NCBI GenBank assembly: GCA_950097015.1
Contig: CATNEN010000001.1
Coordinates: forward strand, 9,548,001 to 9,612,000
Direction of reading: 5' to 3'
Length of the DNA stretch: 64,000 bases
From: Macrostomum hystrix
Taxonomy: Eukaryota; Animalia; Platyhelminthes
Below the pieces are notes generated by a model. That model saw nothing but the letters and a program-made list of their open reading frames with translations, made no database searches and was not told the DNA's origin. A program made the translations under genes and the position numbers. Positions 14,190 through 61,700 of this stretch are shown here, in pieces; the first letter of the stretch is position 1, and each line of letters starts with the position of its first letter.

Positions 14190-14814
14190 TAGAATCGTAG
14201 TTGACACAGCTATAGAATCGTAGTTGACACAGCTATAGAATCGTAGTTGACACAGCTATAGAATCGTAGTTGACACAGCTATAGAATCGTAGTTGACACA
14301 GCTATAGAATCGTAGTTGACACAGCTATAGAATCGTAGTTGACACAGCTATAGAATCGCAGTTGACACAGCTATAGAATCGTAGTTGACACAGCTATAGA
14401 ATCGTAGTTGACACAGCTATAGAATCGTAGTTGACACAGCTATAGAATCGTAGTTGACACAGCTATAGAATCGTAGTTGACACAGCTATAGAATCGTAGT
14501 TGACACAGCTATAGAATCGTAGTTGACACAGCTATAGAATCGTAGTTGACACAGCTATAGAATCGTAGTTGACACAGCTATAGAATCGTAGTTGACACAG
14601 CTATAGAATCGTCACTGACACAGCTATAGAATCGTAGTTGACACAGCTATAGAATCGTAGTTGACACAGCTATAGAATCGTAGTTGACACAGCTATAGAA
14701 TCGTAGTTGACACAGCTATAGATACGTAGTTGACACAGCTATAGAATCGTAGTTGACACAGCTATAGAATCGTAGTTGACACAACTATAGATACGTAGTT
14801 GACACAGCTATAGA

Positions 14815-41009: not shown

Positions 41010-43245
41010 TTCCTCTCCCATCACCACATCCTCTCCCGCCACCCCATCCAAGACCGTCACCCCATCCTATCCCGTCACCCCATCCTCTCATCACCCATTT
41101 TCTCCCATCACCCCATCCTCTCCCATCACCCCATCCTCTCCCATCACCCCATTCTCTCCCCATCCTATCCCATCACCCCATCCTCTCCCATCACCCCATC
41201 CTCTCCCATCACCCCATCCTCTCCCATCACCCCATCCTCTCCCATCACCCCATCCTCTCCCATCACCCCATCCTCTCCCATCACCCCATCCTCTCCCATC
41301 ACCCCATCCTCTCCCATCACCCCATCCTCTCCCATCACCCCATCCTCTCCCATCACCCCATCCTCTCCCATCACCCCATCCTCTCCCATCACCCCATCCT
41401 CTCCCATCACCCCATTCTCTCCCCATCCTATCCCATCACCCCATCCTCTCCCATCACCCATCCTCTCCCATCACCCATCCTCTCCCATCACCCATCCTCT
41501 CCCGTCACCCATCCTCTCCCGTCACCCCATCCTCCCCCATCACCCATTCTCTCCCATCACCCATCCTCTCCCATCACCCATCCTCTCCCATCACCCCATC
41601 CTCTCCCATCACCCCATCCTCTCCCATCACCCCATCCTCTCCCATCACCCCATCCTCTCCCATCACCCCATCCTCTCCCATCACCCCATCCTCTCCCATC
41701 ACCCCATCCTCTCCCATCACCCATCCTCTCCCATCACCCATCCTCTCCCATCACCCATCCTCTCCCATCACCCATCCTCTCCCGTCACCCATCCTCTCCC
41801 GTCACCCCATCCTATCCCGTCACCCCATCCTCCCCCATCACCCATCCTCTCCCATCACCCATCCTCTCCCATCACCCATCCTCTCCCATCACCCATCCTC
41901 TCCCATCACCCCATTCTCTCCCCATCCTATCCCGTCACCCCATCCTCCCCCATCACCCATCCTCTCCCATCACCCATCCTCTCCCATCACCCATCCTCTC
42001 CCATCACCCCATCCTCTCCCATCACCCCATTCTCTCCCCATTCTCTCCCATCACCCCATCCTCCCATCTCCAATCCCCCGTCACCCCATCCTATCCCATC
42101 ACCCATCCTATCTCATCACCCCATCCTCTCCCATCACCCCATCCTCTCCCATCACCCCATTCTCTCCCCATCCTATCCCATCACCCCATCCTCTCCCATC
42201 ACCCATCCTCTCCCATCACCCATCCTCTCCCATCACCCATCCTCTCCCATCACCCATCCTCTCCCATCACCCATCCTCTCCCGTCACCCATCCTCTCCCG
42301 TCACCCCATCCTATCCCGTCACCCCATCCTCCCCCATCACCCATCCTCTCCCATCACCCATCCTCTCCCATCACCCATCCTCTCCCATCACCCCATCCTA
42401 TCCCATCACCCCATCCACTCCCATCACCCATCCTCTCCCATCACCCATCCTCTCCCATCACCCATCCTCTCCCATCACCCATCCTCTCCCGTCACCCATC
42501 CTCTCCCGTCACCCCATCCTATCCCGTCACCCCATCCTCCCCCATCACCCATCCTCTCCCATCACCCATCCTCTCCCATCACCCATCCTCTCCCATCACC
42601 CATCCTCTCCCATCACCCCATTCTCTCCCCATCCTATCCCGTCACCCCATCCTCCCCCATCACCCATCCTCTCCCATCACCCATCCTCTCCCATCACCCA
42701 TCCTCTCCCATCACCCCATCCTCTCCCATCACCCCATTCTCTCCCCATTCTCTCCCATCACCCCATCCTCCCATCTCCAATCCCCCGTCACCCCATCCTA
42801 TCCCATCACCCATCCTATCCCGTCACCCCATCCTCCCCCATCACCCATCCTCTCCCATCACCCATCCTCTCCCATCACCCATCCTCTCCCATCACCCATC
42901 CTCTCCCATCACCCCATTCTCTCCCCATCCTATCCCGTCACCCCATCCTCCCCCATCACCCATCCTCTCCCATCACCCATCCTCTCCCATCACCCATCCT
43001 CTCCCATCACCCCATCCTCTCCCATCACCCATCCTCTCCCATCACCCATCCTCTCCCATCACCCATCCTCTCCCATCACCCCATTCTCTCCCCATTCTCT
43101 CCCATCACCCCATCCTCCCATCTCCAATCCCCCGTCACCCCATCCTATCCCATCACCCATCCTATCCCATCACCCATCCTATCCCATCACCCCGTCCTAT
43201 CCCATCACCCGATCCTATCCCGTCACCCCATCCTCCCTTCGCCCA
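41010..43245. repeat. 17/18-bp C-rich minisatellite (CCCATCACCCCATCCTCT)n upstream of ANK-cGLR copy 1
   Basis: Tandem units; a homologous shorter array lies at 55727-56232. Confidence 0.95.
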
Positions 43246-44028: not shown

Positions 44029-47000
44029 ATGGGACAACACATTGGCCTCCAAGGAGCTGCCAGACACGGGCACCTCAAAATAGTTCGACTTCACATGACA
44101 TTTGTCTGGGGCAATCAACGAAAGAATGCATTGTGCGTCAAGACTTGTCAAGTAGCAGCGAGGGAGGGTCAGTTGGAAGTGGTTCGATTTCTTGTGGAGT
44201 CAGTCGCTGACCAAACAATGAGAGATCTGTGCTGCATGAAGGCTGCGTATTATGCTGCAATCGAGGATCAGTGGGAAGTGGTTCCATTTCTTGTGCAGAC
44301 AGTCGCTGACCAAACAATGAGAGATCAGTTCTGCATGAAGGCTGCGGATTATGCTGCAATCGAGGGTCAGTGGGAAGTGGTTCGATTTCTTGTGCAGACA
44401 GTCGCCGACCAAAATATGAAAGATCAGTGCTGCATTAAGGCTACGGATTATGCTGCAAGCGAGGGTCAGTGGGAAGTGGTTCCATTTCTTGTGCAGACAA
44501 TCGCTGACCAAACAATGAAAGATCAGTGCTGCATTAAGGCTACGGATTATGCTGCAAGCGAGGGTCAGTGGGAAGTGGTTCGATTTCTTGTGCAGACAAT
44601 CGCTGACCAAACAATGAGAGATCAGTGCTGCATTAAGGCAACGGTTTTTGCTGTAATCAACGGTCAGTGGGAAGTGGTTCGATTTCTTGTGCAGACAATC
44701 GCTGACCAAACAAAGAGAGATCAGTGCTGCATGAAGGCTGCGGAATCTGCTGCAACCAAGGGTCAGTTGGAAGTGGTTCGATTTCTTGTGCAGACAATCG
44801 CTAACCAAACAATGAGAGATCAGTGGTGCATGAAGGCTGCGGAATCTGCTGCAATCAAGGGTCAGTTGGAGGTGGTTCGATTTCTTGTGGAGTCAGTCGC
44901 TGACCAAACAATGAGAGATCAGTGCTGCATGAAGGCTGCGGAATCTGCTGCAACCAAGGGTCAGTGGGAAGTGGTTCGATTTCTTGTTCAGACAGTCGCT
45001 GACCAAACTATGAGAGATCAGTGCTGCATGAAGGCTGCGGAATCTGCTGCAACCAAGGGTCAGTGGGAAGTGGTTCCATTTCTTGTGCAGACAGTCGCTG
45101 ACCAAAAAATGAGAGATCAGTTCTGCATGAAGGCTGCGGATTATGCTGCAATCGAGGGTCAGTTGGAAGTGGTTCCATTTCTTGTGCAGACAGTCGCTGA
45201 CCAAACAATGAGAGATCAGTTCTGCATGAAGGCTGCGGATTATGCTGCAATCGAGGGTCAGTGGGAAGTGGTTCGATTGCTTGTGCAGACATTCGCTGAC
45301 CAAACAATGAGAGATCAGTTCTGCATGAAGGCTGCGGAATCTGCTGCAATCGAGAATCAGTGGGAAGTGGTTCCATTTCTTGTGCAGACAGTCGCTGACC
45401 AAACAATGAGAGATCAGTGCTGCATTAAGGCTGCGGAATCTGCTGCAACCAAGGGTCAGTGGGAAGTGGTTCGATTGCTTGTGCAGACATTCGCTGACCA
45501 AACAATGAGAGATCAGTTCTGCATGAAGGCTGCGGAATCTGCTGCAATCGAGAATCAGTGGGAAGTGGTTCCATTTCTTGTTCAGACAGTCGCTGACCAA
45601 ACTATGAGAGATCAGTGCTGCATGAAGGCTGCGGAATCTGCTGCAACCAAGGGTCAGTGGGAAGTGGTTCGATTGCTTGTGCAGACATTCGCTGACCAAA
45701 CAATGAGAGATCAGTTCTGCATGAAGGCTGCGGAATCTGCTGCAATCGAGAATCAGTGGGAAGTGGTTCCATTTCTTGTGCAGACAGTCGCTGACCAAAC
45801 AATGAGAGATCAGTGCTGCATTAAGGCTGCGGAATCTGCTGCAACCAAGGGTCAGTGGGAAGTGGTTCGATTTCTTGTTCAGACAGTCGCTGACCAAACT
45901 ATGAGAGATCAGTGCTGCATGAAGGCTGCGGAATCTGCTGCAACCAAGGGTCAGTGGGAAGTGGTTCGATTTCTTGTGCAGACAGTCGCTGACCAAACAA
46001 TGAGAGATCAGTTCTGCATGAAGGCTGCGGATTATGCTGCAATCGAGGGTCAGTGGGAAGTGGTTCGATTGCTTGTGCAGACATTCGCTGACCAAACAAT
46101 GAGAGATCAGTTCTGCATGAAGGCTGCGGAATCTGCTGCAATCGAGAATCAGTGGGAAGTGGTTCGATTTCTTGTTCAGACAGTCGCTGACCAAACTATG
46201 AGAGATCAGTGCTGCATGAAGGCTGCGGAATCTGCTGCAACCAAGGGTCAGTGGGAAGTGGTTCGATTTCTTGTTCAGACAGTCGCTGACCAAACTATGA
46301 GAGATCAGTGCTGCATGAAGGCTGCGGAATCTGCTGCAACCAAGGGTCAGTGGGAAGTGGTTCGATTTCTTGTTCAGACAGTCGCTGACCAAACTATGAG
46401 AGATCAGTGCTGCATGAAGGCTGTGGAATCTGCTGCAATCCATGGTCAGTTAGAGGTGGTTCGATTTCTTGTTCAGACAGTCGCTGGTCAGCGTTCAGGG
46501 AATCAGAGCTGCGAAGGGGCTGGTGAGTCTGCTGAAAGAGAACTTGTCCTAACTTCTCTTCGCAAAATATGCATTGAGGCAGCTTGCTCTCGTCTCCACG
46601 AAGACATTGTGGCTTTTCTCGGACTCGAGCCCTGCTGGCTTCTTCACTCAAGCCAAGTCCTCAGATTTGCCGCCTCGATGGCCACTGAGGGCAGGAACTC
46701 TGTTCTCGCCCAGACCCTGTCTCGAATGCAGCCAGATGAGATCACGCAGCTGCTCTGTCTCTCCATCCAACACGGTCATGTTGCGCTGGCTCTTACTGTC
46801 ATGGAAGACAAGCAATTCAGCAGAGAATATGTCGATTCACCCGACGGCGGTGGAGCTACAGCCCTCATGCTGTCAGCTGATGCAGGTCATCACGAGCTCA
46901 TTGACAAGCTGCTAGAATTAGGTGCGTCAGTGAGGGCACAAGACAGTCAGGGTCGGACAGCTCTGTCGCGAGCTTGTGAAGCGGGTCATGTGCGAGCAGC

Positions 47001-49697
47001 CAAGAGTCTGATGGTCAGAGGCGCCGATTCGAGTCATCGAGACACTCGGGGTAGGACATGCGCGCAGCTGGCCGAGCAACACCCGCAGCTGCTGCGACTG
47101 CTGGCGCCCCAGGCTTTGATGTAAGCTGAATTTCTTAAACTGAATTTTCTCATCTCCGGAGACACTGAAGTGCCGCAATTTCTCAAATTGAATTTCGTTA
47201 CTTTTTTGCACAGAAAGTTTGCGTCACACTCTTTAGCTCTTAATTGGAGCAACTGCGCTAGTTTCAACGCTAGGTTTTAGGACACAACTTGTCAATTAAT
47301 TTCTTAATCGTACTTTTAGCTCGTATTTTGCTGGCAATAAAATTTGGGGCTAATTCACATTTCAGCCCTGATGCAAAAGCCACTGTTACTCGTTCTTTAA
47401 GTTTCGGAGGCTTACGGACCGAGACAGAATTTCAGCAGGATCTGGATGCGTAAGTATTCTTTTCGTTTCGCTTGCCAGTTATTTTTGCAGCGTTGATTGG
47501 CTCACCATTTGCCTCATTCTAGGATTTCCCAAAATCCTTTTGATTTTAGCAGCTCTTTGCTCGCAAGCTGGCTCGAGTGGCGAGCTGTACCAAAGAAGCA
47601 TATAACTTGAAAAGTGTGATTTCATAATATTCCAGAACCCGTAGCACTCTCTTGGTCTTGACCTGGAAACCAGCTGGTGTCCTGTCTCGAGACAGGAAAT
47701 ATCAATAATACAGAATATTCAGCATTTAACTAAAAACTCTAGTACATGTAAGAGAGGCCAGAACTTTCCTTTGTTCTGCAGGCTCCAAGACGAGTCACGG
47801 CACGACAGTCGGCTCAGTGAAGATCTGCACCGGCTGCTTAGCGAGGCGGGATTCACTCAGCACAGAGCTCAGTGCCAGCAGCGAATGGCTGCCTGGCTGG
47901 AAGGAGTCGCTCGATTCCTCACTCAAGAGGACAGGTGGATGACAGGTAGCTTCGCAGAGGGCTGGGCCAACAGTGTAGTGCAAGTGAACGGCAGGACAGC
48001 GGCAGACTCCGACATCGACTGGACTGTGCTCGTTGCTGGGCAGGAGTTTCACTTGGAGGGCCACTGCATTGAAAGGTTGTACACCAGCTGCAAAGTGTCT
48101 ACGAAGCTGAAGGTCACGGAGGGTCACGCGCAGGTGGCCGTGGGATCAGGTGAGTTCCTGGACAATTTTGAACAGTCTTGGGACCTGGGACTTAACTCAC
48201 AACTTTTGGATCCCTCACTCACCGTCCTTTGCAGGCAGCCAGCCGGCCGTCAGAACCGATGCATGCGGTGTGCGGCCTGCTCAGGACACCTGCCATGCGA
48301 TCCAGTGCTGCAGCAAGTTCAGTGAGCACAGAATCAAGAAGCTTATAAAGACTGACAACTTTGATGCAGTTCACCTCGTGAGAGCGACCAGACCGAACTC
48401 GACCAACGAGCTCAGACTGAGCTTCAGCTTCCACGAGAGAGAGGCCATGAGACGGCTGAGCACAGTCCAGGGACAGCTTTTTACACTCATCAAATTTATC
48501 TTCAAAAGATACTTGCCACACACTCTGGACACACCTGGACTCAAGACCTACCATGCAAAGACTCTGCTCTTCTTCATGCTGGAGAAGCATGGCACAGATC
48601 CAAATGCTGAAGATTGGCAGCCTCAGAATCTTATCTCACTGCTGAAGGAGTCTCTCGACATGATGCTGAGCTTCATCTACTCAAGCAGCTCACCCGATGA
48701 GTGCATGCCGCACTTCTTCATGTCCGACGCTCCGCTCTACTTCAAGAACGCTGGAATCGGCGGCGACTTCGACAACACGAAGGCGAGGGTTCGAGACCGA
48801 CTGAGAGAGCTGAGAAGCGACATCGGCGGAGTGGTTGAGCAGATAAGGAGACTCGTGAGACCTCTGCAGTCAGAAAATTTCTTCTTTCACCCGTTTACTC
48901 TGCTGCCACTGACAGCGCTTTCCACAGTCACTGAGCTGAAGACATATTACTTTGAAGAGTGTTCGAATGTGTTCAGTGTGGTGCAGCAGTGCATGGCCGA
49001 GCTGCAGTCAGAGTCATCTGACATAGACACCCTGATGAGTCAGCTCAGTCTCCTGCATCAGCTGCGGTGGTGCAAGTGCGCCGCCCTGTGCATGACCGCA
49101 ATTGCTCATCTGAAGTTCGGAGACTCCGAGGAGGCTGAGAGACTCCTGATGGAGCTGCGAGGTCACGAATGCCAAAATGGACTGCGCCCAGAAGATTTCA
49201 GAGAAGTGATGTCCGTCATTCGGCTGCCCTCGGACTCGGACTGGGCGTGGAGGTTCTGCCTCCCCGCACACACTCCGCCTCGATTCCCATTCCTTCCCGA
49301 GTTCACGCAGACTCTGCTCACAGCCAGACTGTCGCAGCCTCGCTCTGAGCACCTGTACGTGAACTTCCGCTGCCTGAGCTGGAGTCTCCAAGCTGAGCTG
49401 CTCCGCAATCGCACAGCAATCGACTTCGGTGCGTGGCGCTCAGAGCTGCAAGAGGACCCGGACTTGGAGGAACTGCTCACTCTGGCTCACTACAGTGACC
49501 AAGCTGAGCACGTGGAGTTCAGTCTGCGACAGATCGTCACGGTCGAAAAACGCGTCGCCATGGAAACGCAGGATGAGAAGAAGATCAGCTGGGTCAGGGA
49601 GAAGCTGGAGCGAATTTGGCGCAATGACATCTCCATGGAGACGGCGGAGCAGCAGAGAGATGGCTGGCTCCACGCAAAGCTGCAGCGGTTTGCATAG
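44029..49697 (+). CDS. Ankyrin-like repeat array + ankyrin + Mab-21/cGAS-like nucleotidyltransferase (cGLR) + helical C-terminus, copy 1; 4 exons, ~1668 aa
   Basis: Exons 44029-47120, 47366-47449, 47782-48149 and 48235-49697 total 5007 nt, in frame, all GT-AG. 24 x 33-aa repeats; canonical ANK (GATALMLSADAGH, GRTALSRACEAGH); NTase MTGSFAEG...DSDID, QDTCHAIQC, LRLSFSFHE, LKTYHAKTLLFF, CMPHFF. Confidence 0.88.
44167..46490 (+). repeat. Coding tandem array of 24 x 99-bp units (last unit partial)
   Basis: GQ(W/L)EVV motif every 99 bp from 44167 to 46444. Confidence 0.95.
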
Positions 49698-50231
49698 TCA
49701 ACCATTGACGGATAAACGACGCGTTGCCATGGTGATTGCTGGTCCATCTTAATTTGAATTTCTGCCAAGCCAGGCAGACCTTTCGGTGTCATTTGCTCTG
49801 ATGCTGCCTTAAGTTCATGCTGTGAAACTTTTAAACAATTTTCTCACATATCCTTGTTATTAGTTATTGGTTATTAGCTTCGTCAATTTAATGCGATATG
49901 TTTTCTTGTGTTTTCATACGTTTGCCTCTCCAATTTCGACTACGATTGAAAATGATAGAAGAAAAAGGAGGTTTCGAAAATGAATTATATCGCTTTTACA
50001 TGATTTCACTGTCAACACGTTTTGAGAAATGACATTTTGACGCTGCGAATTCTCGCTACTGTATCACCTAAACTTTTTGCTTATTCGACTATTACTGTGG
50101 AACAAGAGATAAGCTAAATTTTCCTTCTTGATTTTTCCTGATTTTGTTTTCCTCTCTTTTATTCCCCCCCGTCACTCTGACAAGGCAGTTGAAGTACTTC
50201 CCATTTTTCAGCCGATGTGGCAAGACTTTCT

Positions 50232-51136
50232 CAAGCTACTGGAAGTAAGTGGACGTCCCTAGAAGCTACTGGAAGTGAGTGGACGTCTCTAGAACCTACT
50301 GGAAGTGAGGGGAGGTCTCTAGAAGCTACTGGAAGTCAGTGGAGGTCTCTAGAAGCTACTGGAAGTGAGGGGAGTTCTCTAGAAGCTACTGGAAGTGAGG
50401 GGAGGTCTCTGGAAGCTACTGGAAGTGAGGGGAGGTCTCTAGAAGCTACTGAAAGTGAGTGGAAGTCTCTAGAAGTCTCTAGATGCTACTGGAAGTGAGG
50501 GGAGGTCTCTAGAAGCTACTGGAAGTCAGTGGAGGTCTCTAGAAGCTACTGGAAGTGAGGGGAGTTCTCTAGAAGCTACTGGAAGTGAGGGGAGGTCTCT
50601 GGAAGCTACTGGAAGTCAGTGGAGGTCTCTGGAAGCTACTGGAAGTGAGGGGAGTTCTCTAGAAGCTACTGGAAGTGAGGGGAGTTCTCTAGAAGCTACT
50701 GGAAGTGAGGGGAGGTCTCTAGAAGCTACTGGAAGTCAGTGGAGGTCTCTAGAAGCTACTGGAAGTCAGTGGAGGTCTCTAGAAGCTACTGGAAGTGAGG
50801 GGAGTTCTCTAGAAGCTACTGGACGTCAGTGGAGGTCTCTAGAAGCTACTGGAAGTCAGTGGAGGTCTCTAGAAGCTACTGGAAGTGAGGGGAGTTCTCT
50901 AGAAGCTACTGGAAGTGAGGGGAGGTCTCTAGAAGCTACTGGAAGTGAGTGGAAGTCTCTAGAAGTCTCTAGATGCTACTGGAAGTGAGGGGAGTTCTCT
51001 AGAAGCTACTGGAAGTCAGTGGAGGTCTCTAGAAGCTACTGGAAGTGAGGGGAGTTCTCTAGAAGCTACTGGACGTCAGTGGAGGTCTCTAGAAGCTACT
51101 GGAAGTGAGGGGAGGTCTCTAGAATCTACTGGAAGT
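50232..51136. repeat. 30-bp minisatellite (AGAAGCTACTGGAAGTGAGGGGAGGTCTCT)n
   Basis: About 30 units. Confidence 0.95.
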
Positions 51137-51384
51137 AATTTCAAGTCAGTTTATTATGCGATCAGTGTCACCCCGGCTGAGTTGATTGATTTATTTTTTT
51201 TTCTGAATTATTGTTGTGTAATGTACAAAGTACATGTGTGTACAGAAATATTGTAATATTAGTTGTATTGCATGCATAACATAATTGTATTGCTGAATGA
51301 AAAAGCAATATTCTTATTTAGCCTTGTTAGAATTCTAAATATATTATCTTCTTGGCTTCATTATTTAATTTACTCTTTTACTAT

Positions 51385-52420
51385 CGGCCCCATCATCCAC
51401 TCCATCATCCACTCCATCATCCACTCCATCATTCACTCCATCATCCACTTCATCAACCACGCCACCATCAAACTTATCATCCACTTAATTATCCACTCCA
51501 ACATCCACTCCACCATCAAATCCATTATCCATTCCATCATCGGCACCATCATCCACTACAACATCCGGATTCCCGATGTCACAGATTCCCGATGCCACAG
51601 ATTCCCTATGTCACAGATTCCCTATGTCACAGATTCCTGATGTCACAGATTCCTGATGTCACAGATTCCTGATGTCACAGATTCCTGATGTCACAGATTC
51701 CTCATGTCACAGATTCCTCATGTCACCGATTCCTGATGTCACAGATTTCTCAAGTCACAGATTCCTCATGTCACAGATTCCTGTTCTCACAGATTCCCGA
51801 TGTCACAGATTCCTGATGTCAAATGTCACAGATTCCTGATGTCACACATTCCTGATGTCACACATTCCTGATGTCACAGATTCCTGGTGTCACAGATTCC
51901 TGATGTCACAGATTCCTGATGTCACAGATTCCTGATGTCACAGATTCCTGATGTCACAGATTCCTGATGTCACAGATTCCTGATGTCACAGATTCCTGAT
52001 GTCACAGATTCCTGATGTCACAGATTCCTGATGTCACACATTCCTGATGTCACAGATTCCTGATGTCACAGATTCCTGATGTCACAGATTCCTGATGTCA
52101 CACATTCCTGATGTCACAGATTCCTGATGTCACAGATTCCTGATGTCACAGATTCCTGATGTCACAGATTCCTGATGTCACAGATTCCTGATGTCACACA
52201 TTCCTGATGTCACAGATTCCTGATGTCACACATTCCTGATGTCACAGATTCCTGATGTCACACATTCCTGATGTCACACATTCCTGATGTCACAGATTCC
52301 TGATGTCACACATTCCTGATGTCACAGATTCCTGATGTCACAGATTCCTGATGTCACACATTCCTGATGTCACACATTCCTGATGTCACACATTCCTGAT
52401 TTCACAGATGTTCCTGATGT
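51385..52420. repeat. (ATCCACTCCATC)n tract followed by 16-bp minisatellite (ATTCCTGATGTCACAG)n
   Basis: Tandem units visible; the 16-bp array spans 51570-52420. Confidence 0.93.
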
Positions 52421-53492
52421 TGCCATCAACAGCGGTGATCAACCAGTCGAAACGCGGGCGCATGAAGACTTTGACCTGCGGAACAATCTGGCCGAACCAG
52501 CCGAGCTTTCCAATTACCTTCTGAGCAGAGCGCAAGTGCAGCCGATTCTCCTTGCGAGTCTGACTCAGCAGCTTCATCGTCTCCAGGGCCTTTTCCTCGG
52601 GCAGCGTTTTCGTGCCGGTCGCTGTGTTGATACACACGCCAAGGAAGTTGATGCACTGGGCCGGCCTGACCACCTTGTCCCAGTTGATGGTGAAGCCGAG
52701 ACGCTGGAGGATGTCCAGCAGGTAGTTGAAAACAGCAGAAACTTCAGACTCCGACCGCCCAGCAACAGCCCAGTCGTCCAGGTAGTTCACCGTGGCTGTG
52801 AATCCAAGCTTTTGCATGTGACGAGTCACGGCGGCAGAGAGGCGGTGAAAAACCTCGCAAGCAGCTTTGGCACCAATCGGCAGCCTGGTGTCGCAGAGCA
52901 GACTGTCGTGGCTGTCCGTATCAAACTGCCAGGAGAGACCGACGAGGGCGTAGTCCTCCGGCCTTATCGGCACGGACCTGTAGGCATTCTTGAGGTCGAT
53001 CTTGGCCATGTAGCATCCAGGATGAAGATGGCGGACCAGTTGCTGGACAGTGCCGTACTTAATGTGTTTCTGCTGGTCGTAGCAGTCGTTGACCGACTGG
53101 CCGGACGGGTGGGACAGGTCGTGGATCAGGCAGATCCGCCCGTCGGGCTTGGGGATGGCGCCGATAGGATTGACTTTAATCGGACCGCTGCACCTGATGT
53201 ACATCCCCAGGCGCAGCTCCTCCTGGATCTGGGCTTCAACTGCGTCGTGGTGCATCATGGCGGAGGCGTGATTCTTGGACGACGTCATAGGCGGATGACC
53301 AGCGTTGGTGAGGGCGAACCCGTAAACGGCACCTTGCATCAGGAATTCGCGGTCAGGGTCGTCGCTTAGCAAAGCATTCCAGACATCAGGTTTGAGATCA
53401 GACGAAATGGATGAGGAAGTAAAAGCAGAAACACCGGCGGTAAAATCAGGGTAGTCAGCTTGATAAAAAGACTTCAGTTTTTGCACTCGCAC
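52386..53492 (-). CDS. Reverse transcriptase of the DIRS/Ngaro-like element (3'-truncated)
   Basis: YLDD catalytic motif and conserved RT domains; the ORF runs into the minisatellite. Confidence 0.88.
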   Translation of the reverse strand: MRVQKLKSFYQADYPDFTAGVSAFTSSSISSDLKPDVWNALLSDDPDREFLMQGAVYGFALTNAGHPPMTSSKNHASAMMHHDAVEAQIQEELRLGMYIRCSGPIKVNPIGAIPKPDGRICLIHDLSHPSGQSVNDCYDQQKHIKYGTVQQLVRHLHPGCYMAKIDLKNAYRSVPIRPEDYALVGLSWQFDTDSHDSLLCDTRLPIGAKAACEVFHRLSAAVTRHMQKLGFTATVNYLDDWAVAGRSESEVSAVFNYLLDILQRLGFTINWDKVVRPAQCINFLGVCINTATGTKTLPEEKALETMKLLSQTRKENRLHLRSAQKVIGKLGWFGQIVPQVKVFMRPRFDWLITAVDGNIRNICEIRNV

Positions 53493-54790
53493 CAGTCACG
53501 TGACCTGCGAGCTGACCATGGGCGTGAGCCGGATGCGGTGTCTGGCAGCCTTGGATCTTGCAGACGTGGCGGAACTTGCAGCGCTGGTGTGTGCAGCCCG
53601 CCTCGGAGTTGAACCTCAAGCGAATAGGCCGGGAAGTTGCCGATGTTGAGGGCAGCTGATGTTGGTTGAGTTGCTTAGCCATAGTAAACCGCAGGTTGTT
53701 CGGCGCGTTGAGATGCTTGTGGTACAACTGAGGGGGCTCCTCGCCCCAGAGCATGCCGGTCTCAGCCACCAGTTTTCGATAGTCTTCATCAAACTCCCAG
53801 ATCACGGATTGGGGGTAATCAGCATCCAGCAGCTCTCCAATCTTCCGGTTGTAGTCAAGATAGCCAAGAACATCAGTCAGGAGACCGGTGTCTTCGGAAG
53901 CCGGCTGTAGCTTCTTTCGGATCATCTCTCGCAGGATGATGGAGTTAGCGGCTATCCATTGACCAACCGAGATGCTAGACAGTTTTGGCTCCTGCTTCCT
54001 GAATTTGAGAGCGCCATTCTCCATGGTAGCTATCAGCTGCTCCTGACTGGCTGAACCGACTCTACTGGACGGCTTCATGTGGTCTCTGATCAACTGCGCT
54101 TTGTGGGTTGAGACGCGGGAGTTGCTGGGCTGGAGCTGCGTCGCCTCTCTCACCCCAGAGACAAAAACATCAGACAAATGCAGGTTAGCGTGAAGTTCTG
54201 CTCACCTGGCGTTGGCTGAGGCTGCACCGCCGGTCGTTGCTGGGAGTGAAGCTGCTGCTGGAGTTCACGGCGACGACCCTCCAGGACACGCACTTCGAGC
54301 AGCTCCACCTCCTGCCGCAGCGCCGCCAGCTGGTCGCTCCTCGCCCCCGGAGACGCCTCGCCCGCACTGCCGTTACCGACATCGGTGCCAGGAGAAGCCC
54401 TCGCGGTTTCTTGAGTGTTGACCTGCTCTGAGCTGAGTGCTGTGGATAGACGCTGGGACGCTTGTTGCCAGTAGCAGGTAGGCCTCTATTCTGCAGCTCT
54501 GCCTTGAGTTAAGACGCTGTGGGCTAGCACTCATATCGCAAAGGGCTGCTGAGCAAGGTAAAAAAATTTTAACAAACCGCGGCAGAGGTGAGACGGTAGG
54601 AGCGCGGGGGCTTAAAGCGAGCCGGGGCAGCCAGCCACCCCACGCCCCCCGCCTCCAGAGTACACGCACGCACGCACAAAGCACCACCCCGACGGTGTGT
54701 CTAACACACCTTACTCAGAGAGTAACGAACACAAAAAATCCCGAGTGCCGAATGCTCGAGCGATTTAAACAAATACAACCCGTAAAAGCC
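52420..54790 (-). mobile_element. Truncated tyrosine-recombinase-class (DIRS/Ngaro-like) retrotransposon: gag-like ORF + overlapping RT
   Basis: RT with ICLIHDLS, KIDLKNAYRSVPI, LPIG, NYLDDW, GFTINWDK, FLG. The upstream ORF ends in a Cys/His knuckle (CTHQRCKFRHVC...C..PHPAH) and overlaps RT in another frame. RNase H and YR are absent. The 5' boundary is approximate. Confidence 0.82.
53455..54177 (-). CDS. Gag-like ORF of the DIRS/Ngaro-like element (5' part disrupted)
   Basis: WEFDEDYRKL...W motif and C-terminal Cys/His cluster; lies immediately upstream of RT. Confidence 0.65.
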   Translation of the reverse strand: MSDVFVSGVREATQLQPSNSRVSTHKAQLIRDHMKPSSRVGSASQEQLIATMENGALKFRKQEPKLSSISVGQWIAANSIILREMIRKKLQPASEDTGLLTDVLGYLDYNRKIGELLDADYPQSVIWEFDEDYRKLVAETGMLWGEEPPQLYHKHLNAPNNLRFTMAKQLNQHQLPSTSATSRPIRLRFNSEAGCTHQRCKFRHVCKIQGCQTPHPAHAHGQLAGHVTGASAKTEVFLSS

Positions 54791-54964
54791 GGAATTTATT
54801 TCGGGTCTTTAGTCTGCTGATTGGCATTTCTTTGTCATTCTTTATCATGAGCTATTAAAATCCTTGTATTTTCGCTTCTGTGTTATTGCATTTAATATTT
54901 TTAGAATCCCATATATTAGTTCAAGGGTCCTCAACCAAGTTTACTTATCTAGCCTTGTTCACCC

Positions 54965-55155
54965 TGAGCTTCTCATCGTCAGGCAGAGTACACTCTTCCT
55001 GTGCCTGGGAGATTGGCTCTCAAGGCGTAAATTGCACGACAAGCCCCGAAAGCCTTTTCTGCGCATCTGGATCCCAAATGCCACGACTCGAATTCGAGCC
55101 CAGGACTTTGTCATGAGAGGCCAATGCATTAGACTGTTCTGACACTCAACCCCTC
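54965..55155 (-). mobile_element. Diverged SINE B-related fragment
   Basis: Reverse complement contains GGCTTGTCGTGCAATTTACGCC...GTGTACTCTGCCTGACGATGAGAAG, shared with SINE B. Confidence 0.7.
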
Positions 55156-55726
55156 AGATACAAGGTTCGCCTACAAAAATGTATGAGCCGTTTCTTTTCA
55201 CTGCTCATGCAATTCGATATCAACTAGAAATTCACAGACACACAGGTACCAACTGATAGCCAGTGCTATATCAGATAAGACTGGACTGTAGCATACTCAG
55301 CACTAGAAAAACCAAGACAGTTTGAGCACACAAGAGACTGGAGGCCAAAAACTTTAATTTTTCGCGAGAGACACAAACTAACGACACAGACAGCTCAAAG
55401 CAGTCACTGAGCAACGGACATCGTCGAGTCACAACTGCGAACCTCCCTGCCAGTGTCCGTAAACTGCAGGTTGATCAGTGAGTCACTTTAATATTGCATG
55501 AATTGTTTCAGTATGCATTTTGCAATCGAATACATTTCGGGACAAGCTAACTTGAGGACAAAATGAAACTAAAATTGCAACTAGTTATTTTACAAATAAT
55601 AATTTTTTACTTGATAACTAACTAGCATGAAGTAACGCCATAATCAATTTCAACTTGTATTTTTTGAAGCAAATCGTATGTCTAATCGAACCAGTTTCGT
55701 CTAACACCTCCCAAACACATTCCAAA

Positions 55727-56232
55727 ACCCCATCCTCCCCTATCACCCCATCCTCCCCTATCACCCCATCCTCCCCTATCACCCCATCCTCCCCTATCAC
55801 TCCATCCTCCCCTATCACTCCATCCTCCCCTATCACCCCATCCTCCCCTATCACTCCATCCTCCCCTATCACTCCATCCCCCCTATCACCCCATCCTCCC
55901 CTATCACCCATCCTCTCCCATCACCCCATCCTTTCATGTCACCCCATCCTCACCTAACACCCAATCCATTCATGTCACCCCATCCTCCCCTATCACCCCA
56001 TCCTCCCCTATCACCCCATCCTCCCCTATCACCCCATCCTCCCCTATCACCCATCCTCTCCCATCACCCCATCCTTTCATGTCACCCCATCCTCCCCTAT
56101 CACCCATCCTCTCCCATCACCCCATCCTTTCATGTCACCCCATCCTCCCCTATCACCCATCCTCCCCTATCACCCCATCCTCTCCCATCACCTCATCCTC
56201 TCCCATCACCTCATCCTCTCCCATCACCCCAT
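55727..56232. repeat. 18-bp C-rich minisatellite (CCCCTATCACCCCATCCT)n upstream of ANK-cGLR copy 2
   Basis: Paralogous to 41010-43245. Confidence 0.92.
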
Positions 56233-56821
56233 TGCTGACAGGCCGACCCTTTGCTGACAGGCTAATTGGAATGTGGGTCCCCTGTTTGATTGATCTTAGG
56301 TCGCTGCTTCTTGAACCTGTGTGTTATCATCGCCGGTTTCGAAACATTTTTGTTGTAAGCAAAACATTTTTTCCTCGCCAATGGGACGAGTGGGACTGGC
56401 TTGCCTGATGTCAATAGGACCACTCACATATTTCACTGACCCCTGCCCCCTTCCCCTCCGTCTACTTCCGGAGCCTGCTTTCCTCGCAACTCTCTCCTGT
56501 CCCCTTCCCCCTGTCCCCTTCACTCTCCCCTGTCCTCTACCCTGCTCCCTCCTTCCTTCCCCCTCCCTCCCTGCACTGGCGAGCCTAAATTTCCTCTCCC
56601 TTAATTGCTTGCTCTGCCAGCCGCTCAACTGTGTGCTAGTCCCGCGGGTAAGGATTAATCGACAGTCATGACACTCCACCACTCTTGAAGTCCAGGCACC
56701 CACACTTCAACAAAGAAATTCCATAAAACCATGAAAGACTGAAAATTATAACAAACTCCATACTCCAATGACATAAAACAAGCAGGCGATACCTTGAGAA
56801 GAAAAGCCAACGACATTTGAG

Positions 56822-59800
56822 ATGGGACAACACATTGGCCTTCAAGGAGCTGCCAGACACGGGCACCTCAAAATAGTTCGACTTCACATGACATTTGTCA
56901 GGGGCAATCAACGAAAGAATGCATTGTGCGTCAAGACTTGTCAAGTAGCAGCGGGGGAGGGTCAGTTGAATGTGGTTCGATTTCTTGTGGAGACAATCGC
57001 TGACCAAACAATGAGAGGTCTGTGCTGCATGAATGCAACGGTTATTGCTGTAATCAACGGTCAGTGGGAAGTGGTTCCATTTCTTGTGCAGACAATCGCT
57101 GACCAAACAATGAGAGATCAGAGCTGCATGGAGGCTACGGATTATGCCGCAAACAACGGTCAGTGGGAAGTGGTTCGATTTCTTGTGCAGACAGTCGCCG
57201 ACCAAAATATGAAAGATCAGTGCTGCATTAAGGCTACGGATTATGCTGCAAACAAGGGTCAGTGGGAAGTGGTTCCATTTCTTGTGCAGACAATCGCTGA
57301 CCAAAGTGTGAGAGATCGATGCTGCATGAAGGCTGCGGAATCTGCTGCAATCAAGGGTCAGTTGGAAGTGGTTCCATTTCTTGTGCAGACAATCGCTGAA
57401 CAAACAATGAGAGATCAGTGCTGCATGGAGGCTACGGATTATGCCGCAAACAACGGTCAGTGGGAAGTGGTTCGATTTCTTGTGCAGACAGTCGCCGACC
57501 AAAATATGAAAGATCAGTGCTGCATTAAGGCTACGTATTATGCTGCAAACAAGGGTCAGTGGGAAGTGGTTCCATTTCTTGTGCAGACAATCGCTGACCA
57601 AACAATGAGATATGAATGCTGCATGGAGGCTACGGATTATGCTGCAATCACCGGTCAGTGGGAAGTGGTTCGATTTCTTGTGCAGACAGTCGCTGACCAA
57701 ACTATGAGAGATCAGTTCTGCATGAAGGCTGCGGAATCTGCTGCAATCAAGGGTCAGTTGGAAGTGGTTCGATTTCTTGTGCAGACAATCGCTGACCAAA
57801 CAATGAGAGATCAGTGCTGCATGAAGGCTGTGGAATCTGCTGCAATCAATGGTCAGTTGGAAGTGGTTCGATTTCTTGTTCAGACAGTCGCTGGTCAGCG
57901 TTCACGGAATCAGAGCTGCGAAGAGGCTGGTGAGTCTGCTGAAAGAGAACTTGTCCTAACTTCTCTTCGCAAAAAATGCATTGAGGCAGCTTGCTCTCGT
58001 CTCCACGAAGACATTGTGGCTTTTCTCGGACTAGAGCCCTGCTGGCTTCTTCACTCAAGCCAAGTCCTCAGATTTGCCGCCTCGATGGCCACTGAGGGCA
58101 GGAACTCTGTTCTCGCCCAGACCCTGTCTCGAATGCAGCCAGCTGAGATCACACAGCTGCTCTGTCTCTCCATCCAACACGGTCATGTTGCGCTGGCTCT
58201 TACTGTCATGGAAGACAAGCAATTCAGCAGAGAATATGTCGATTCGCCCGACGGCGGTGGAGCTACAGCCCTCATGCTGTCAGCTGATGCAGGTCATCAC
58301 GAGCTCATTGACAAGCTGCTAGAATTAGGTGCGTCAGTGAGGGCACAAGACAGTCAGGGTCGGACAGCTCTGTCGCGAGCTTGTGAAGCGGGTCATGTGC
58401 GAGCAGCCAAGAGTCTGATGGTCAGAGGCGCGGATGCGAGTCATCGAGACGCTCGGGGTCGGACATGCGCGCAGCTGGCCGAGCAACACCCGCAGCTGCT
58501 GCGACTGCTGGCGCCCCAGGCTTTGATGTAAGCTGAATTTCTTAAACTGAATTTTCTCATCTCCGTGAGACACTGAAGTGCCGCAATTTCTCAAATTGAA
58601 TTTCGTTACTTTTTTGCACAGAAAGTTTGCGTCACACTCTTTAGCTCTTAATTGGAGCATCTGCGCTAGTTTCAACGCTAGGTTTTAGGACACAACTTGT
58701 CAATTAATTTCTTAATCGTACTTTTATTTTGCTGGCAATAAAATTTGCGGCTAATTTACATTTCAGCCCTGATGCAAAAGCCACTGTTACTCGTCCATTA
58801 AGTTTCGGCGGCTTACGGACCGAGACAGAATTTCAGCAGGATCTGGATGCGTAAGTGTTCTTTTCGTTTCGCTTGCCAGTTATTTTTGCAGCGTTGATTG
58901 GCTCACCATTGCCTCATTCTAGGATTTCCCTAAATCCTTTTGATTTTCGCAGCTCTTTGCTCGCAAGCTGGCTCGAGTGGCGAGCTGTTCCAAAGAAGCA
59001 TATAACTTGAAAAGTGTGATTTCATAATATTCCAGAACCCGTAGCACTCTCTTGGCCTTGTCCTAGAAACCAGCTGGTGTCCTCTCTCGAGACAGGAAAT
59101 ATCAATAATACAGAATATTCAGCATTTAACTAAAAACTCTAGTACATGTAAGAGAGGCCAGAACTTTCCTTTGTTCTGCAGGCTCCAAGACGAGTCACGG
59201 CACGACAGTCGGCTCAGTGAAGATCTGCACCGGCTGCTTAGCGAGGCGGGATTCACTCGGCGCAGAGCTCAGTGCCAGCAGCGAATGGCTGCCTGGCTGG
59301 AAGGAGTCGCTCGATTCCTCACTCAAGAGGACAGGTGGATGACAGGTAGCTTCGCAGAGGGCTGGGCCAACAGTCTGGTGCAAGTGAACGGCAGGACAGC
59401 GGCAGACTCCGACATCGACTGGACTGTGCTGGTCGCTGGGCAGGAGTTTCACTTGGAGGGCCACTGCATTGAAAGGTTGTACACCACCTGCAAAGTGTCT
59501 ACGAAGCTGAAGGTCACGGAGGGTCACGCGCAGGTGGCCGTGGGATCAGGTGAGTTCCTGGACAATTTTGAACAGTCTTGGGACCTGGGACTTAACTCAC
59601 AACTTTTGGATCCCTCACTCACCGACCTGTGCAGGCAGCCAGCCGGCCGTCAGAACCGATGCATGCGGTGTGCGGCCTGCTCAGGACACCTGCCATGCGA
59701 TCCAGTGCTGCAGCAAGCTCAGTGAGCACAGAATCAAAAAGCTTATAAAGACTGAAAACTTTGATGCAGTTCACCTCGTGAGAGCGACCAGACCGAACTC

Positions 59801-61073
59801 GACCAACGAGCTCAGACTGAGCTTCAGCTTCCACGAGAGAGAGGCCATGAGACGGCTGAGCACAGTCCAGGGACAGCTTTTTACACTCATCAAATTTATC
59901 TTCAAAAGATACTTGCCACACACTCTGGGCACACCTGGACTCAAGACCTACCATGCAAAGACTCTGCTCTTCTTCATGCTGGAGAAGCATGGCACAGATC
60001 CAAATGCTGAAGATTGGCAGCCTAAGAATCTTATCTCACTGCTGAAGGTGTCTTTCGACATGATGCTGAGCTTCATCGACTCAAGCAGCTCACCCGATGA
60101 GTGCATGCCGCACTTCTTCATGTCCGACGCTCCGCTCTACTTCAAGAACGCTGGAATCGGCGGCGACTTCGACAACACGAAGGCGAGGGTTCGAGACCGA
60201 CTGAGAGAGCTGAGAAGCGACATCGGCGGAGTGGTTGAGCAGATAAGGAGACTCGTGAGACCTCTGCAGTCAGAAAATTTCTTCTTTCACCCGTTTACTC
60301 TGCTGCCCCTGACAGCGCTTTCCACAGTCACTGAGCTGAAGACATATTACTTTGAAGAGTGTTCGAATGTGTTCAGTGTGGTGCAGCAGTGCATGGCCGA
60401 GCTGCAGTCAGAGTCATCTGACAGAGACACCCTGATGAGTCAGCTCAGTCTCCTGCATCAGCTGCGGTGGTGCAAGTGCGCCGCCCTGTGCATGACCGCA
60501 ATTGCTCATCTGAAGTTCGGAGACTCCGAGGAGGCTGAGAGACTCCTGATGGAGCTGCGAGGTCACGAATGCCAAAATGGACTGCGCCCAGAAGATTTCA
60601 GAGAAGTGATGTCCGTCATTCGGCTGCCCTCGGACTCGGACTGGGCGTGGAGGTTCTGCCTCCCCGCACACACTCCGCCTCGATATCCATTCCTTCCCGA
60701 GTCTACGCAGACTCTGCTCACAGCGAGACTGTCACAGCCTCGCTCTGAGCACCTGTACGTGAACTTCCGCTGCCTGAGCTGGAGTCTTCAAGCTGAGCTG
60801 CTCCCCAATCGCACAGCAATCGACTTCGGTGCGTGGCGCTCAGAGCTGCAAGAGGACCCGGACTTGGAGGAACTGCTCACTCTGGCTCACTACAGTGACC
60901 AAGCTGAGCACGTGGAGTTCAGTCTGCGACAGATGGAGATCGTCACGGTCGAAAAACGCGTCGCCATGGAAACGCAGGATGAGAAGAAGATCAGCTGGGT
61001 CAGGGACAAGCTGGAGCGAATTCGGCGCAAAGACATCTCCATGGAGACGGCGGTGCAGCAGAGAGATGGCTGA
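56822..61073 (+). CDS. Ankyrin-like repeat array + ankyrin + Mab-21/cGAS-like nucleotidyltransferase (cGLR), copy 2; 4 exons, ~1198 aa
   Basis: Exons 56822-58527, 58767-58850, 59182-59549 and 59635-61073 total 3597 nt, in frame. Same motifs as copy 1; 10 repeats; TGG>TGA shortens the C-terminus by 10 aa. Confidence 0.88.
56960..57897 (+). repeat. Coding tandem array of 10 x 99-bp units (last unit partial)
   Basis: GQ motif every 99 bp from 56960 to 57851. Confidence 0.95.
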
Positions 61074-61444
61074 CTCCACCCAAAGCTGCAGCGGTTTGCA
61101 TATTCAACAGCGGAGCCACTGACTGTTACATAATGTGAATTTCTACTAAGCCAGGCAGACCTTTCGGTCTCATATGTTCTGTTGCTACCTCAAGTTCATG
61201 TTGTGACACTTGTGACAAGTTCATAATTTCTATTTGCTTCGTAAATTAAATTTGATAAGTTTTGCTTATGTTTTCATATGTTTGCCTTTCCAGTTTCGAC
61301 TCCGATTGAAAAATGATAGAAGCCAAAGAACGTTTCGAAAATGAATTATATCGTTTTTACATGATTTCGCTATCATTGCGTTTTGAGAAATGACATTTTG
61401 ACGCTGCGAATTCACCTAAACTTTTTGCATATTTGAAAATATCA

Positions 61445-61700
61445 ACCACTTCATCATCCACACCAGAATCCGCCCCGTCATTAATTCCATCATCCGCCCC
61501 GTCATCCATTCCATCATCCACTCCAGAATCCGCCCCGTCATTAATTCCATCATCCGCCCCGTCATCCACTCCATCATCCACTCCAGAATCCGCCCCGTCA
61601 TCCGTCCCTTCATTCGCCCTATCATCCACTACATCATCCGCCCCGTCATCCGTCCCTTCATTCGCCCTATCATCCACTCCAACATCCGCCCGTCATTCAT
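61445..61700. repeat. CCATCATCCACTCC/CCGCCCCGTCA low-complexity repeat
   Basis: Visible; similar to the 51385-51565 tract behind copy 1. Confidence 0.8.

What the first reader, a model, noticed from the sequence alone, without database searches (positions are those of the whole stretch)
44029..61073. Tandem pair of cGAS-like receptors wired to variable-length ankyrin-like sensor arrays: candidate diversifying innate immune receptor system
Seen: the three separate ORFs per copy, plus an 84-nt micro-exon missed by the ORF track, splice in frame (GT-AG; phases 2,2,1) into one protein. The order is N-cap, 24 (or 10) near-identical 33-aa repeats, canonical ankyrins, an NTase with GS..EG/DxD/D motifs and Mab-21 signatures (RLSFS, YHxKT, CxPHFF), then a helical tail. 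Known: Mab-21-fold cGLRs make cyclic-dinucleotide second messengers in animal innate immunity, and fungal NLRs use highly internally conserved WD/ANK/TPR arrays as shuffleable ligand sensors. Inference: this locus couples an NLR-style, recombination-diversified repeat sensor to a cGAS-type signal generator. That would be a receptor architecture able to produce new recognition specificities in an invertebrate.
Basis: partly seen in the sequence, partly recalled or inferred. Interest (0 to 1): 0.92.

Follow-up and report, generated by a model that had tools for sequence, protein, structure and literature searches.

The report
Flatworm ankyrin-array cGAS-like receptor gene pair
Two neighbouring, transcribed flatworm genes each join a long run of near-identical ankyrin repeats (24 or 10 copies, variable on one helix face) to a cGAS-like enzyme with an intact active site, so they look like fast-diversifying innate-immune sensors, though no function has been tested.

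Summary
Two tandem four-exon genes (44029-49697 and 56822-61073) each encode an N-cap, 24 or 10 units of a 33-aa ankyrin repeat, canonical ankyrins, an 84-nt linker exon, a cGAS/Mab-21 nucleotidyltransferase and a helical tail. Spliced contigs in public runs reproduce all three GT..AG introns of copy 1, so the ankyrin exon and the enzyme exons form one transcript.

The catalytic motifs (GS, DxD, third Asp) are unchanged in all 18 family genes examined. A model of a 58%-identical Macrostomum lignano paralog matches human cGAS at Z 20.9.

The genes belong to a large expansion in what is probably a Macrostomum genome: at least 148 NTase-exon hits, about 45 with this ankyrin module. Arrays hold 2-24 units. 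The two copies are about 98% identical outside the arrays, but their arrays differ in number and sequence. Variation sits at unit positions 6, 9, 10, 13, 14 and 17, where nonsynonymous differences are about 3x the synonymous rate.

The architecture is not new. Li et al. 2023 list ANK-cGLR fusions and screened five M. lignano members without the ankyrins. The diversifying, internally conserved array was not found described.

Enzyme activity, ligand, immune role and a STING partner (one sub-threshold hit) are untested. Exons were never joined for any search or fold.

The parts
44029..47120 (+). Copy 1, exon 1: start codon, N-cap, ankyrin array and canonical ankyrins (3092 nt; ends in phase 2 at a GTAAGC donor)
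   Evidence: ORF; Ank_2 E 1e-101; joint 47120>47366 in X3/X4 contigs
44125..46500 (+). Copy 1 array: 24 units of 99 nt / 33 aa. Scaffold is DQCCxKAAxxAAxxGQxEVVRFLVQTVADQTMR. Units A09-A23 are 98-100% identical in blocks
   Evidence: TRF; units in register; unit-to-unit DNA identities
46501..47120 (+). Copy 1 degenerate repeats plus 2-3 canonical ankyrin repeats. This module is shared by about 45 paralogs
47366..47449 (+). Copy 1, exon 2: 84-nt micro-exon encoding a linker
   Evidence: joints 47120>47366 and 47449>47782, GT..AG, in X3/X4; sequence
47782..48149 (+). Copy 1, exon 3: spine helix and first part of the NTase core. G59-S60 codons at 47945-47950; Asp-x-Asp codons at 48011-48019
48235..48875 (+). 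Copy 1, exon 4, first part: third catalytic Asp (48285-48287, in PAQDTCHAI) and the Mab-21 C-terminal lobe (RLSFSF, YHAKT, CMPHFF)
   Evidence: Mab-21_C 30.5 bits; best PDB sequence hits are cGLR1 and cGAS; family alignment
48876..49697 (+). Copy 1, exon 4, tail: 273-aa family-specific domain (TPR-like helices, a small sheet, a long C-terminal helix) and the stop codon
   Evidence: AF2 pLDDT 87.5; no PDB fold above background, Z<=8.4; no Pfam hit
56822..58527 (+). Copy 2, exon 1 (array of 10 units at 56918-57907)
58767..58850 (+). Copy 2, exon 2 (84-nt micro-exon)
   Evidence: 96% identical to copy 1
59182..59549 (+). Copy 2, exon 3 (NTase N-terminal part with GS and DxD)
59635..61073 (+). Copy 2, exon 4 (third Asp, Mab-21_C, tail; 8 aa shorter at the C-terminus)

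Best explanation
SHOWN. These are two recently duplicated, transcribed genes, probably of a Macrostomum flatworm. Each encodes one polypeptide made of four parts: a long ankyrin solenoid built from an internally conserved 33-aa unit (24 or 10 copies), a short linker, a cGAS/Mab-21-fold nucleotidyltransferase with a complete active site, and a family-specific helical tail. They belong to a lineage-specific expansion of more than 100 cGLR-like genes. The enzyme core is invariant in that family. The ankyrin arrays change quickly in unit number and at one stripe of residues (positions 6, 9, 10, 13, 14, 17), which fits the exposed face of the inner ankyrin helix.

INFERRED. The array is the variable ligand-recognition surface. 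It is reshaped by unequal crossing-over or gene conversion between units and by diversifying selection. Ligand binding releases or assembles the NTase, which then makes a cyclic or linear oligonucleotide signal. That signal is read by a downstream receptor, possibly a divergent STING-like protein. On this reading the genes are cytosolic innate-immune or non-self sensors, working like fungal NLRs with highly conserved repeats but with a cGLR as the output module.
For: One transcript: spliced contigs cover all three introns.
Fold: the AF2 model of paralog P0005 (pLDDT 88) matches human cGAS at Z 20.9, rmsd 3.4 A over 263 residues, and oyster Cv-cGLR1 at Z 19.6.
Active site: GS, DxD and the third Asp are identical in 16 of the 18 genes examined; two loci gave no match to the third-Asp pattern. 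They are also conserved across 48 family representatives. They sit on the expected strand-helix elements of the model.
Family size: at least 148 exon-3 hits, at least 90 Mab-21_C hits and about 45 with this ankyrin module. Exon-1 open frames run 236-1810 aa.
Arrays: 2-24 units. Identity within an array is 0.6-0.86 against 0.48 between arrays.
Rate contrast: the two window copies are 96-99% (about 98%) identical in every exon and intron segment outside the arrays. Best unit-to-unit matches between the arrays are only 89-97% identical.
Selection signal: hypervariable positions were defined on 8 other arrays. In the window arrays they give pN 0.17-0.27 against an array-wide pS of 0.05-0.10; the remaining positions give pN about equal to pS.
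Prior knowledge: ANK-cGLR fusions are recognised as candidate ligand-interacting modules (PMC9980059).
Against: No enzymatic activity, ligand, infection response or tissue expression is known. Five M. lignano family members were screened by Li et al. as NTase-only constructs with poly I:C and dsDNA; none is among their 15 characterised active enzymes. The NTase domain of the paralog is basic (pI 9.3), so it could bind nucleic acid itself. The only STING-like hit in the genome is below Pfam's cut-off (25 vs 27 bits). The pN/pS comparison treats repeat units as independent lineages and ignores gene conversion. The structure comes from a 58%-identical paralog, not from the window protein, because exons were not joined. 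Variation in repeat number between individuals was not tested.
Confidence: 0.55

Rival explanations
1. The NTase domain is itself the sensor, binding dsRNA or dsDNA on its basic back face as known cGLRs do. The ankyrin array would then be a scaffold for localisation, autoinhibition or recruitment of partners, and its variability would be a by-product of repeat instability.
For: The paralog's NTase domain has pI 9.3. All characterised cGLRs sense nucleic acids on the NTase (PMC9980059). Non-hypervariable repeat positions evolve at pN about equal to pS, which fits relaxed constraint.
Against: Variation is not uniform. The same six positions, spaced i, i+3, i+4, i+7, i+8, i+11, are hypervariable in independent arrays, with pN about 3x pS. 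NTase-only M. lignano constructs were not among the enzymes reported as activated by poly I:C or dsDNA.
Confidence: 0.2
2. The family serves a non-immune rapid-evolution role, such as conspecific or gamete recognition, sexual conflict or control of transposable elements, and uses the same sensor-plus-NTase logic.
For: The family sits in large tandem, lineage-specific clusters in a repeat-rich region with a retroelement fragment between the two copies. The fungal proteins with the same repeat behaviour act in allorecognition (PMC4986451).
Against: Nothing in the data points to reproduction or transposon control. Every characterised cGLR is immune.
Confidence: 0.15
3. The genes are decaying or catalytically silent duplicates (pseudo-enzymes), and the arrays simply drift.
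For: Some paralogs are broken: the L009 tail has 2 stops, and the arrays in L002, L003 and L010 are split by a stop or frameshift. Overall pN/pS in the arrays is above 1.
Against: Both window genes have fully open 5.0-kb and 3.6-kb reading frames with canonical splice sites. Copy 1 is transcribed and spliced. The catalytic motifs are invariant across paralogs, and nearly all of the 148 exon-3 hits have no stop.
Confidence: 0.05
4. The ankyrin ORF and the NTase ORFs are separate genes.
For: The exon-1 frame ends in a stop 2 nt after the donor site.
Against: The contigs join 47120 to 47366, 47449 to 47782 and 48149 to 48235 in one record. The same fusion is annotated in many M. lignano proteins.
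Confidence: 0.01

Closest known systems
Animal cGAS-like receptors (cGLRs) with appended ankyrin or TPR repeats (Li et al. 2023, PMC9980059), including the M. lignano constructs #89-93 of their Table S3
   Same: Mab-21/cGAS-fold NTase with a complete active site, fused to ankyrin repeats. By eye, constructs #92 and #93 share the GSYAEGWANSL...DSDIDW...RPAQDTC motifs and much of the surrounding sequence with the window genes.
   Different: In the parts of the paper and supplement I read or word-searched, I found nothing on the arrays' high internal conservation, the variation in unit number, the hypervariable stripe or the size of the flatworm expansion. Their constructs start at the NTase and omit the ankyrins. 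No product or ligand is known.
Fungal NLRs with highly internally conserved ANK/TPR/WD repeats (Dyrka et al. 2014, PMC4986451; Podospora het-d/het-e)
   Same: Near-identical tandem repeat units, unit-number variation among paralogs, a few hypervariable positions on the binding face, and large lineage-specific families.
   Different: There is no NACHT or NB-ARC domain. The repeats are N-terminal. The output module is a nucleotidyltransferase. The host is an animal.
Human/mouse cGAS and oyster Cv-cGLR1 (PDB 6ct9, 4k9b, 8gjw)
   Same: Same fold over the whole catalytic domain (Z 19.6-20.9) and the same catalytic triad layout.
   Different: Only 13-19% identity. The flatworm proteins add an ankyrin solenoid of up to about 30 repeats and a 270-aa C-terminal tail.
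Designed ankyrin repeat proteins (DARPins)
   Same: The 33-aa unit aligns position by position with the DARPin consensus (D1, A11, A12, G15, E18, V20, L23, A28, D29). Positions 13 and 14 are variable in both.
   Different: The TPLH motif is replaced by K/E-A-A-x. Natural variation also uses positions 6, 9, 10 and 17, and uses the beta-turn positions 2, 3, 5 and 33 much less.

Membership tests
cGLR / Mab-21 (cGAS-like nucleotidyltransferase) | cGAS/Mab-21 bilobed NTase fold | tested here: met
   The model of paralog P0005 (58% identical over exon 4) matches human cGAS at Z 20.9, rmsd 3.4 A, 263 aligned residues, covering cGAS 161-521. This was tested on the paralog, not the window protein, because exons were not joined.
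cGLR / Mab-21 (cGAS-like nucleotidyltransferase) | Catalytic G-S motif, [D/E]x[D/E] and a third acidic residue | tested here: met
   GS at 47945-47950, DID at 48011-48019 and D at 48285-48287. GS and DxD are identical in all 18 genes examined and the third-Asp strand in 16 (no pattern match in L009 and L012). They lie on strand-helix, strand and strand of the model.
cGLR / Mab-21 (cGAS-like nucleotidyltransferase) | Pfam Mab-21 models above the gathering score | tested here: inconclusive
   Mab-21_C (PF20266) scores 30.5 and 27.5 bits against a cut-off of 24.1 on the exon-4 ORFs. PF03281 gave no hit on single exons or on full-length paralogs. The best PDB sequence hits are cGLR1 (E 6e-4) and cGAS.
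cGLR / Mab-21 (cGAS-like nucleotidyltransferase) | Ligand-dependent synthesis of a nucleotide second messenger | not testable with these tools
   This needs biochemistry. The related M. lignano NTase-only constructs are not among the 15 active enzymes of PMC9980059.
Ankyrin repeat proteins | 33-residue helix-turn-helix repeats matching the Ank profiles | tested here: met
   Ank_2 gives E 1e-101 with 21 stretches on copy 1 and E 5e-51 on copy 2. The unit aligns with the DARPin consensus.
Highly-internally-conserved-repeat immune receptors (fungal NLR type) | Near-identical tandem units with unit-number variation | tested here: met
   DNA matches are 92% and 87%. Many unit pairs are 98-100% identical. 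Sixteen paralog loci carry 2-24 units. Variation between individuals was not tested.
Highly-internally-conserved-repeat immune receptors (fungal NLR type) | Few hypervariable positions with excess nonsynonymous change | tested here: met
   Positions 6, 9, 10, 13, 14 and 17 were defined on other arrays. They give pN 0.17-0.27 against pS 0.05-0.10 in the window arrays. The counts are simple and not recombination-aware.
Highly-internally-conserved-repeat immune receptors (fungal NLR type) | Central NACHT/NB-ARC NTPase | tested here: not met
   Pfam finds no such domain. This is not an NLR; the likeness lies only in how the repeats behave.
cGLR-STING pathway | A STING receptor in the same genome | tested here: inconclusive
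   There is one STING_LBD hit at G000 C2:9104529-9104996, scoring 25 bits against a cut-off of 27 and covering profile positions 3-145 of 182. All 14 weak PDB hits are STING.

The most novel reading that the evidence does not exclude
Macrostomum flatworms have built a germline-diversifying cytosolic receptor repertoire. Dozens of cGLR enzymes would each be gated by a DARPin-like ankyrin solenoid whose specificity is rewritten by unit shuffling and by selection on one helix face. That would be an animal counterpart of fungal NLRs with highly conserved repeats, it would sense protein or other non-nucleic-acid ligands, and its output would be nucleotide second messengers.
Probability: 0.35. Interest if true: 0.9.

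Novelty: new variant of a known kind. Interest (0 to 1): 0.7.

Why it matters
Most animal cGLRs are orphans. Li et al. 2023 list unknown activating ligands as the main limitation of their screen. A cGLR family whose appended repeat array carries the marks of a fast-evolving binding surface offers a concrete, testable route to non-nucleic-acid cGLR ligands.

It would also show that the repeat-shuffling strategy known from fungal NLRs exists in animals and is coupled to a different signalling module. Li et al. further report that most platyhelminths lack immune cGLRs, so an expansion of more than 100 genes in Macrostomum changes the picture of flatworm immunity. M. lignano is an established laboratory model species (my own knowledge, not checked here).

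The naturally variable 33-aa scaffold may also be of interest for binder engineering.

Tried and rejected
- Joining exons: the spliced protein was never assembled for a search or a fold. Exons were searched singly by reference, and the full-domain structure came from database paralog P0005.
- Pfam PF03281: no hit on single exons or on paralogs.
- Profile of alignment A1 against PDB sequences: swamped by ankyrin proteins and uninformative for the NTase.
- C-terminal tail: no Pfam family, ESM Atlas scores of 0.84 or less, and structural matches only at helical-repeat background, Z<=8.4. Its function stays unknown.
- STING: one sub-threshold hit only; neither shown nor excluded.
The array survey therefore covers 16 of about 45 paralogs.
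- Length differences within M. lignano 90%-identity clusters: suggestive of N-terminal length variation, but confounded by partial gene models, so not used as evidence.
- 'Separate genes' reading: rejected.
- 'NFDAVHLV' Asp as the third catalytic residue: rejected because it is not conserved.
- Literature search for Macrostomum together with cGAS-like: no paper found.
- Reads: the single reads call covered only 46500-49900, so copy 2 and the arrays were not examined with reads.
Full report
OBSERVATION. The stated ORFs exist. Tandem Repeats Finder reports a 99-nt unit x23.5 at 44164-46486 (92% matches) and x9.4 at 56960-57893. Read in register, exon 1 of copy 1 holds a 32-aa N-cap, 24 units of 33 aa (44125-46500), three degenerate units and 2-3 canonical ankyrins. 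Copy 2 has the same layout with 10 units at 56918-57907.

The proposed splice sites are all canonical and keep the frame:
- Copy 1 exons are 44029-47120, 47366-47449 (84 nt), 47782-48149 and 48235-49697, with phases 2,2,1 and a CDS of 5007 nt.
- Copy 2 exons are 56822-58527, 58767-58850, 59182-59549 and 59635-61073, giving 3597 nt.

I checked frames by arithmetic and exon-wise translation only.

TRANSCRIPTION. Laying public runs on 46500-49900 gave contigs from organism B (runs X3 and X4) that are 99-100% identical to the window. They skip exactly 47121-47365, 47450-47781 and 48150-48234, all GT..AG. X4 record 23 (853 nt) carries all three joints, and other contigs run past the stop codon. A wastewater metatranscriptome (X2) holds a contig about 92% identical that is spliced at the same third intron, so a relative is expressed in nature. 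These are assembled contigs, not raw reads. They show presence and joints, not expression level or ends.

WHAT THE DOMAINS ARE. Pfam calls exon 1 ankyrin (Ank_2, E 1e-101) and the exon-4 ORFs Mab-21_C above the curated cut-off (30.5 and 27.5 bits against 24.1). By sequence, the best solved-structure matches of the exon-4 Mab-21 part are a cGLR1 (E 6e-4), then many cGAS entries and Mab21L1.

An exhaustive HMMER search of 1.84 billion representatives found only 145 relatives. Most are 800-2400 aa long with the match at the C-terminal end. The closest are hypothetical proteins of the flatworm Macrostomum lignano with ANK plus Mab-21_C architecture. The window's genome (220 Mb, 42 contigs) is therefore most likely a Macrostomum species; this is an inference.

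I folded the 709-aa M. lignano paralog P0005 (58% identical over exon 4, nearly identical around the motifs) with a 48-sequence family alignment. The model has pLDDT 88 and pTM 0.81. Foldseek ranks cGAS structures first. VIA-align gives Z 20.9, rmsd 3.4 A and 263 aligned residues to human cGAS 161-521, and Z 19.6 to oyster Cv-cGLR1.

ACTIVE SITE. In the family alignment the G-S motif, the DxD and an Asp in 'RPAxDxxxA' are conserved. In the model they fall on the strand-helix junction (G153-S154), strand 175-181 and strand 234-243, which is the classic pol-beta NTase layout. In the window they lie at 47945-47950, 48011-48019 and 48285-48287. The GS and DxD motifs are letter-for-letter the same in both window genes and all 16 paralog loci. 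The third-Asp strand matched in 16 of the 18; my pattern found no match in L009 and L012.

TAIL. The 273-aa tail folds confidently (pLDDT 87.5) into TPR-like helices, a small sheet and a long terminal helix. It has no Pfam family and no structural match above helical background, so its role is unknown.

THE FAMILY AND THE ARRAYS. Six-frame searches of the whole assembly gave these counts:

| Query | Matches |
|---|---|
| Mab-21_C | at least 90 |
| Post-array ankyrin module, >=43% identity | about 45 |

The ankyrin-module hits lie mostly in tandem clusters on contig C1, each 1-5 kb from a Mab-21_C hit. Their exon-1 open frames run from 236 to 1810 aa.

An HMM of the unit counts 2-24 units per gene. 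In ten arrays the mean identity between units is 0.60-0.86, against 0.48 between arrays. Units therefore resemble their neighbours more than their counterparts in other genes. This is the pattern expected from repeated local duplication or conversion.

The two window genes give a direct rate comparison. Every exon and intron segment outside the arrays is 96-99% (about 98%) identical. The arrays differ in number (24 vs 10), and each unit's best match in the other array is only 89-97% identical. Units A09-A23 of copy 1 are 98-100% identical to each other in two-unit blocks, which marks a recent expansion.

WHERE THE VARIATION SITS. Within-array diversity peaks at unit positions 14, 13, 9, 10, 6 and 17. 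The spacing is i, i+3, i+4, i+7, i+8, i+11, which is one face of a helix. The unit aligns position by position with the DARPin consensus. That puts positions 13 and 14 at DARPin's randomised sites and the rest along the inner helix (inference from the alignment; no array was folded).

To avoid circularity I defined the six positions on the eight non-window arrays and then measured the window arrays. At those positions pN is 0.17-0.27, against an array-wide pS of 0.05-0.10. The other 27 positions have pN about equal to pS (one search is the post-hoc version). These are simple Nei-Gojobori counts on units that exchange sequence, so they are indicative rather than a formal test. An earlier scan note (s1-847228) made the same suggestion from reading alone; the counts here agree with it.

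MECHANISM. Shown: one transcript, an ankyrin solenoid plus a cGAS-fold enzyme with a conserved active site, a large expansion, and fast, patterned change confined to the arrays. Inferred: the array's variable face binds ligand, binding activates the NTase, the product signals to a receptor, and the purpose is immune or non-self sensing.

Points against or left open:
- The paralog's NTase is basic (pI 9.3), so it could bind nucleic acid itself.
- The genome's only STING-like hit is sub-threshold.
- No activity is known.

COMPARISON WITH WHAT IS KNOWN. Li et al. 2023 (PMC9980059) state that some cGLRs carry ankyrin or TPR modules, and that three Stylophora cGLRs are fused to ankyrin or death domains. 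Their Table S3 lists five M. lignano proteins, #89-93. By eye, two of them share the window genes' motifs and much surrounding sequence, and they were cloned from the NTase onward without the ankyrins. They were screened with poly I:C and dsDNA. The 15 active enzymes the authors describe come from insects, anemones, molluscs, hydras and corals. They also write that most platyhelminths have no cGLR beyond Mab21-like proteins.

So the architecture and the family's cGLR identity are already on record. I did not find the following described: the high internal conservation of the arrays, the unit-number variation, the hypervariable stripe, or the scale of the expansion in this genome. The best functional analogy is the fungal NLRs with highly conserved ANK/TPR/WD repeats (PMC4986451). 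These genes are not NLRs, because they have no NACHT or NB-ARC domain.

VERDICT. This is a new variant of a known kind: ANK-cGLR fusions, here with a diversifying array. Interest is 0.7. That is high for cGLR ligand discovery and flatworm immunity, but tempered by prior description of the architecture and by the absence of any functional data.

Noticed in passing
window 52386-53489 (-): An ORF with a reverse-transcriptase domain (RVT_1, E 1e-12) lies between the two gene copies. It is a retroelement fragment in the intergenic spacer.
   Followed up: partly
window 37422-39290 (+): A single-exon 622-aa ORF matches the amiloride-sensitive sodium channel family (ASC/DEG-ENaC, E 1e-30, full profile length).
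   Followed up: partly
window 1-43235, 50233-52420, 55727-56232, 61441-61696: The window is dense with minisatellites. Examples are a 23-nt unit x340 at 10841-18684 and a 35-nt unit x45 at 3855-5433. A C-rich 17/18-nt satellite lies upstream of each gene copy (41011-43235 and 55727-56232). 30-nt and 16-nt satellites follow copy 1.
   Followed up: no
protein P0007 (M. lignano, 1099 aa): A family member is annotated as Mab-21 NTase plus ankyrins plus a C-terminal caspase domain (Peptidase_C14, E 3e-25). It is either a direct cGLR-to-protease fusion or a merged gene model.
   Followed up: no
L001 1000-2010 (-) = G000 C2:9104529-9104996: This is the only STING_LBD-like frame in the genome (25 bits, cut-off 27; profile positions 3-145 of 182). 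All weak PDB hits are STING. It is a candidate divergent receptor for the family's product.
   Followed up: partly
L010 2699-6467 (+); L009 8146-8928 (+); L002 and L003: Some paralogs look broken. L010 carries about 24 very uniform units split by one stop. The L009 tail has two stops. The arrays in L002 and L003 are split between frames.
   Followed up: partly
window 47812-48755, run X2 record 11: A wastewater metatranscriptome contig is about 92% identical and spliced at the same third intron. A related worm or paralog is expressed in that habitat.
   Followed up: no
G000 C1: 3.35-3.38, 4.29-4.33, 11.36-11.41, 12.72-12.82 and 13.85-13.87 Mb: The ANK-cGLR paralogs sit in tandem clusters on the same contig as the window. 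At least 10 genes lie within 100 kb at 12.72-12.82 Mb.
   Followed up: partly
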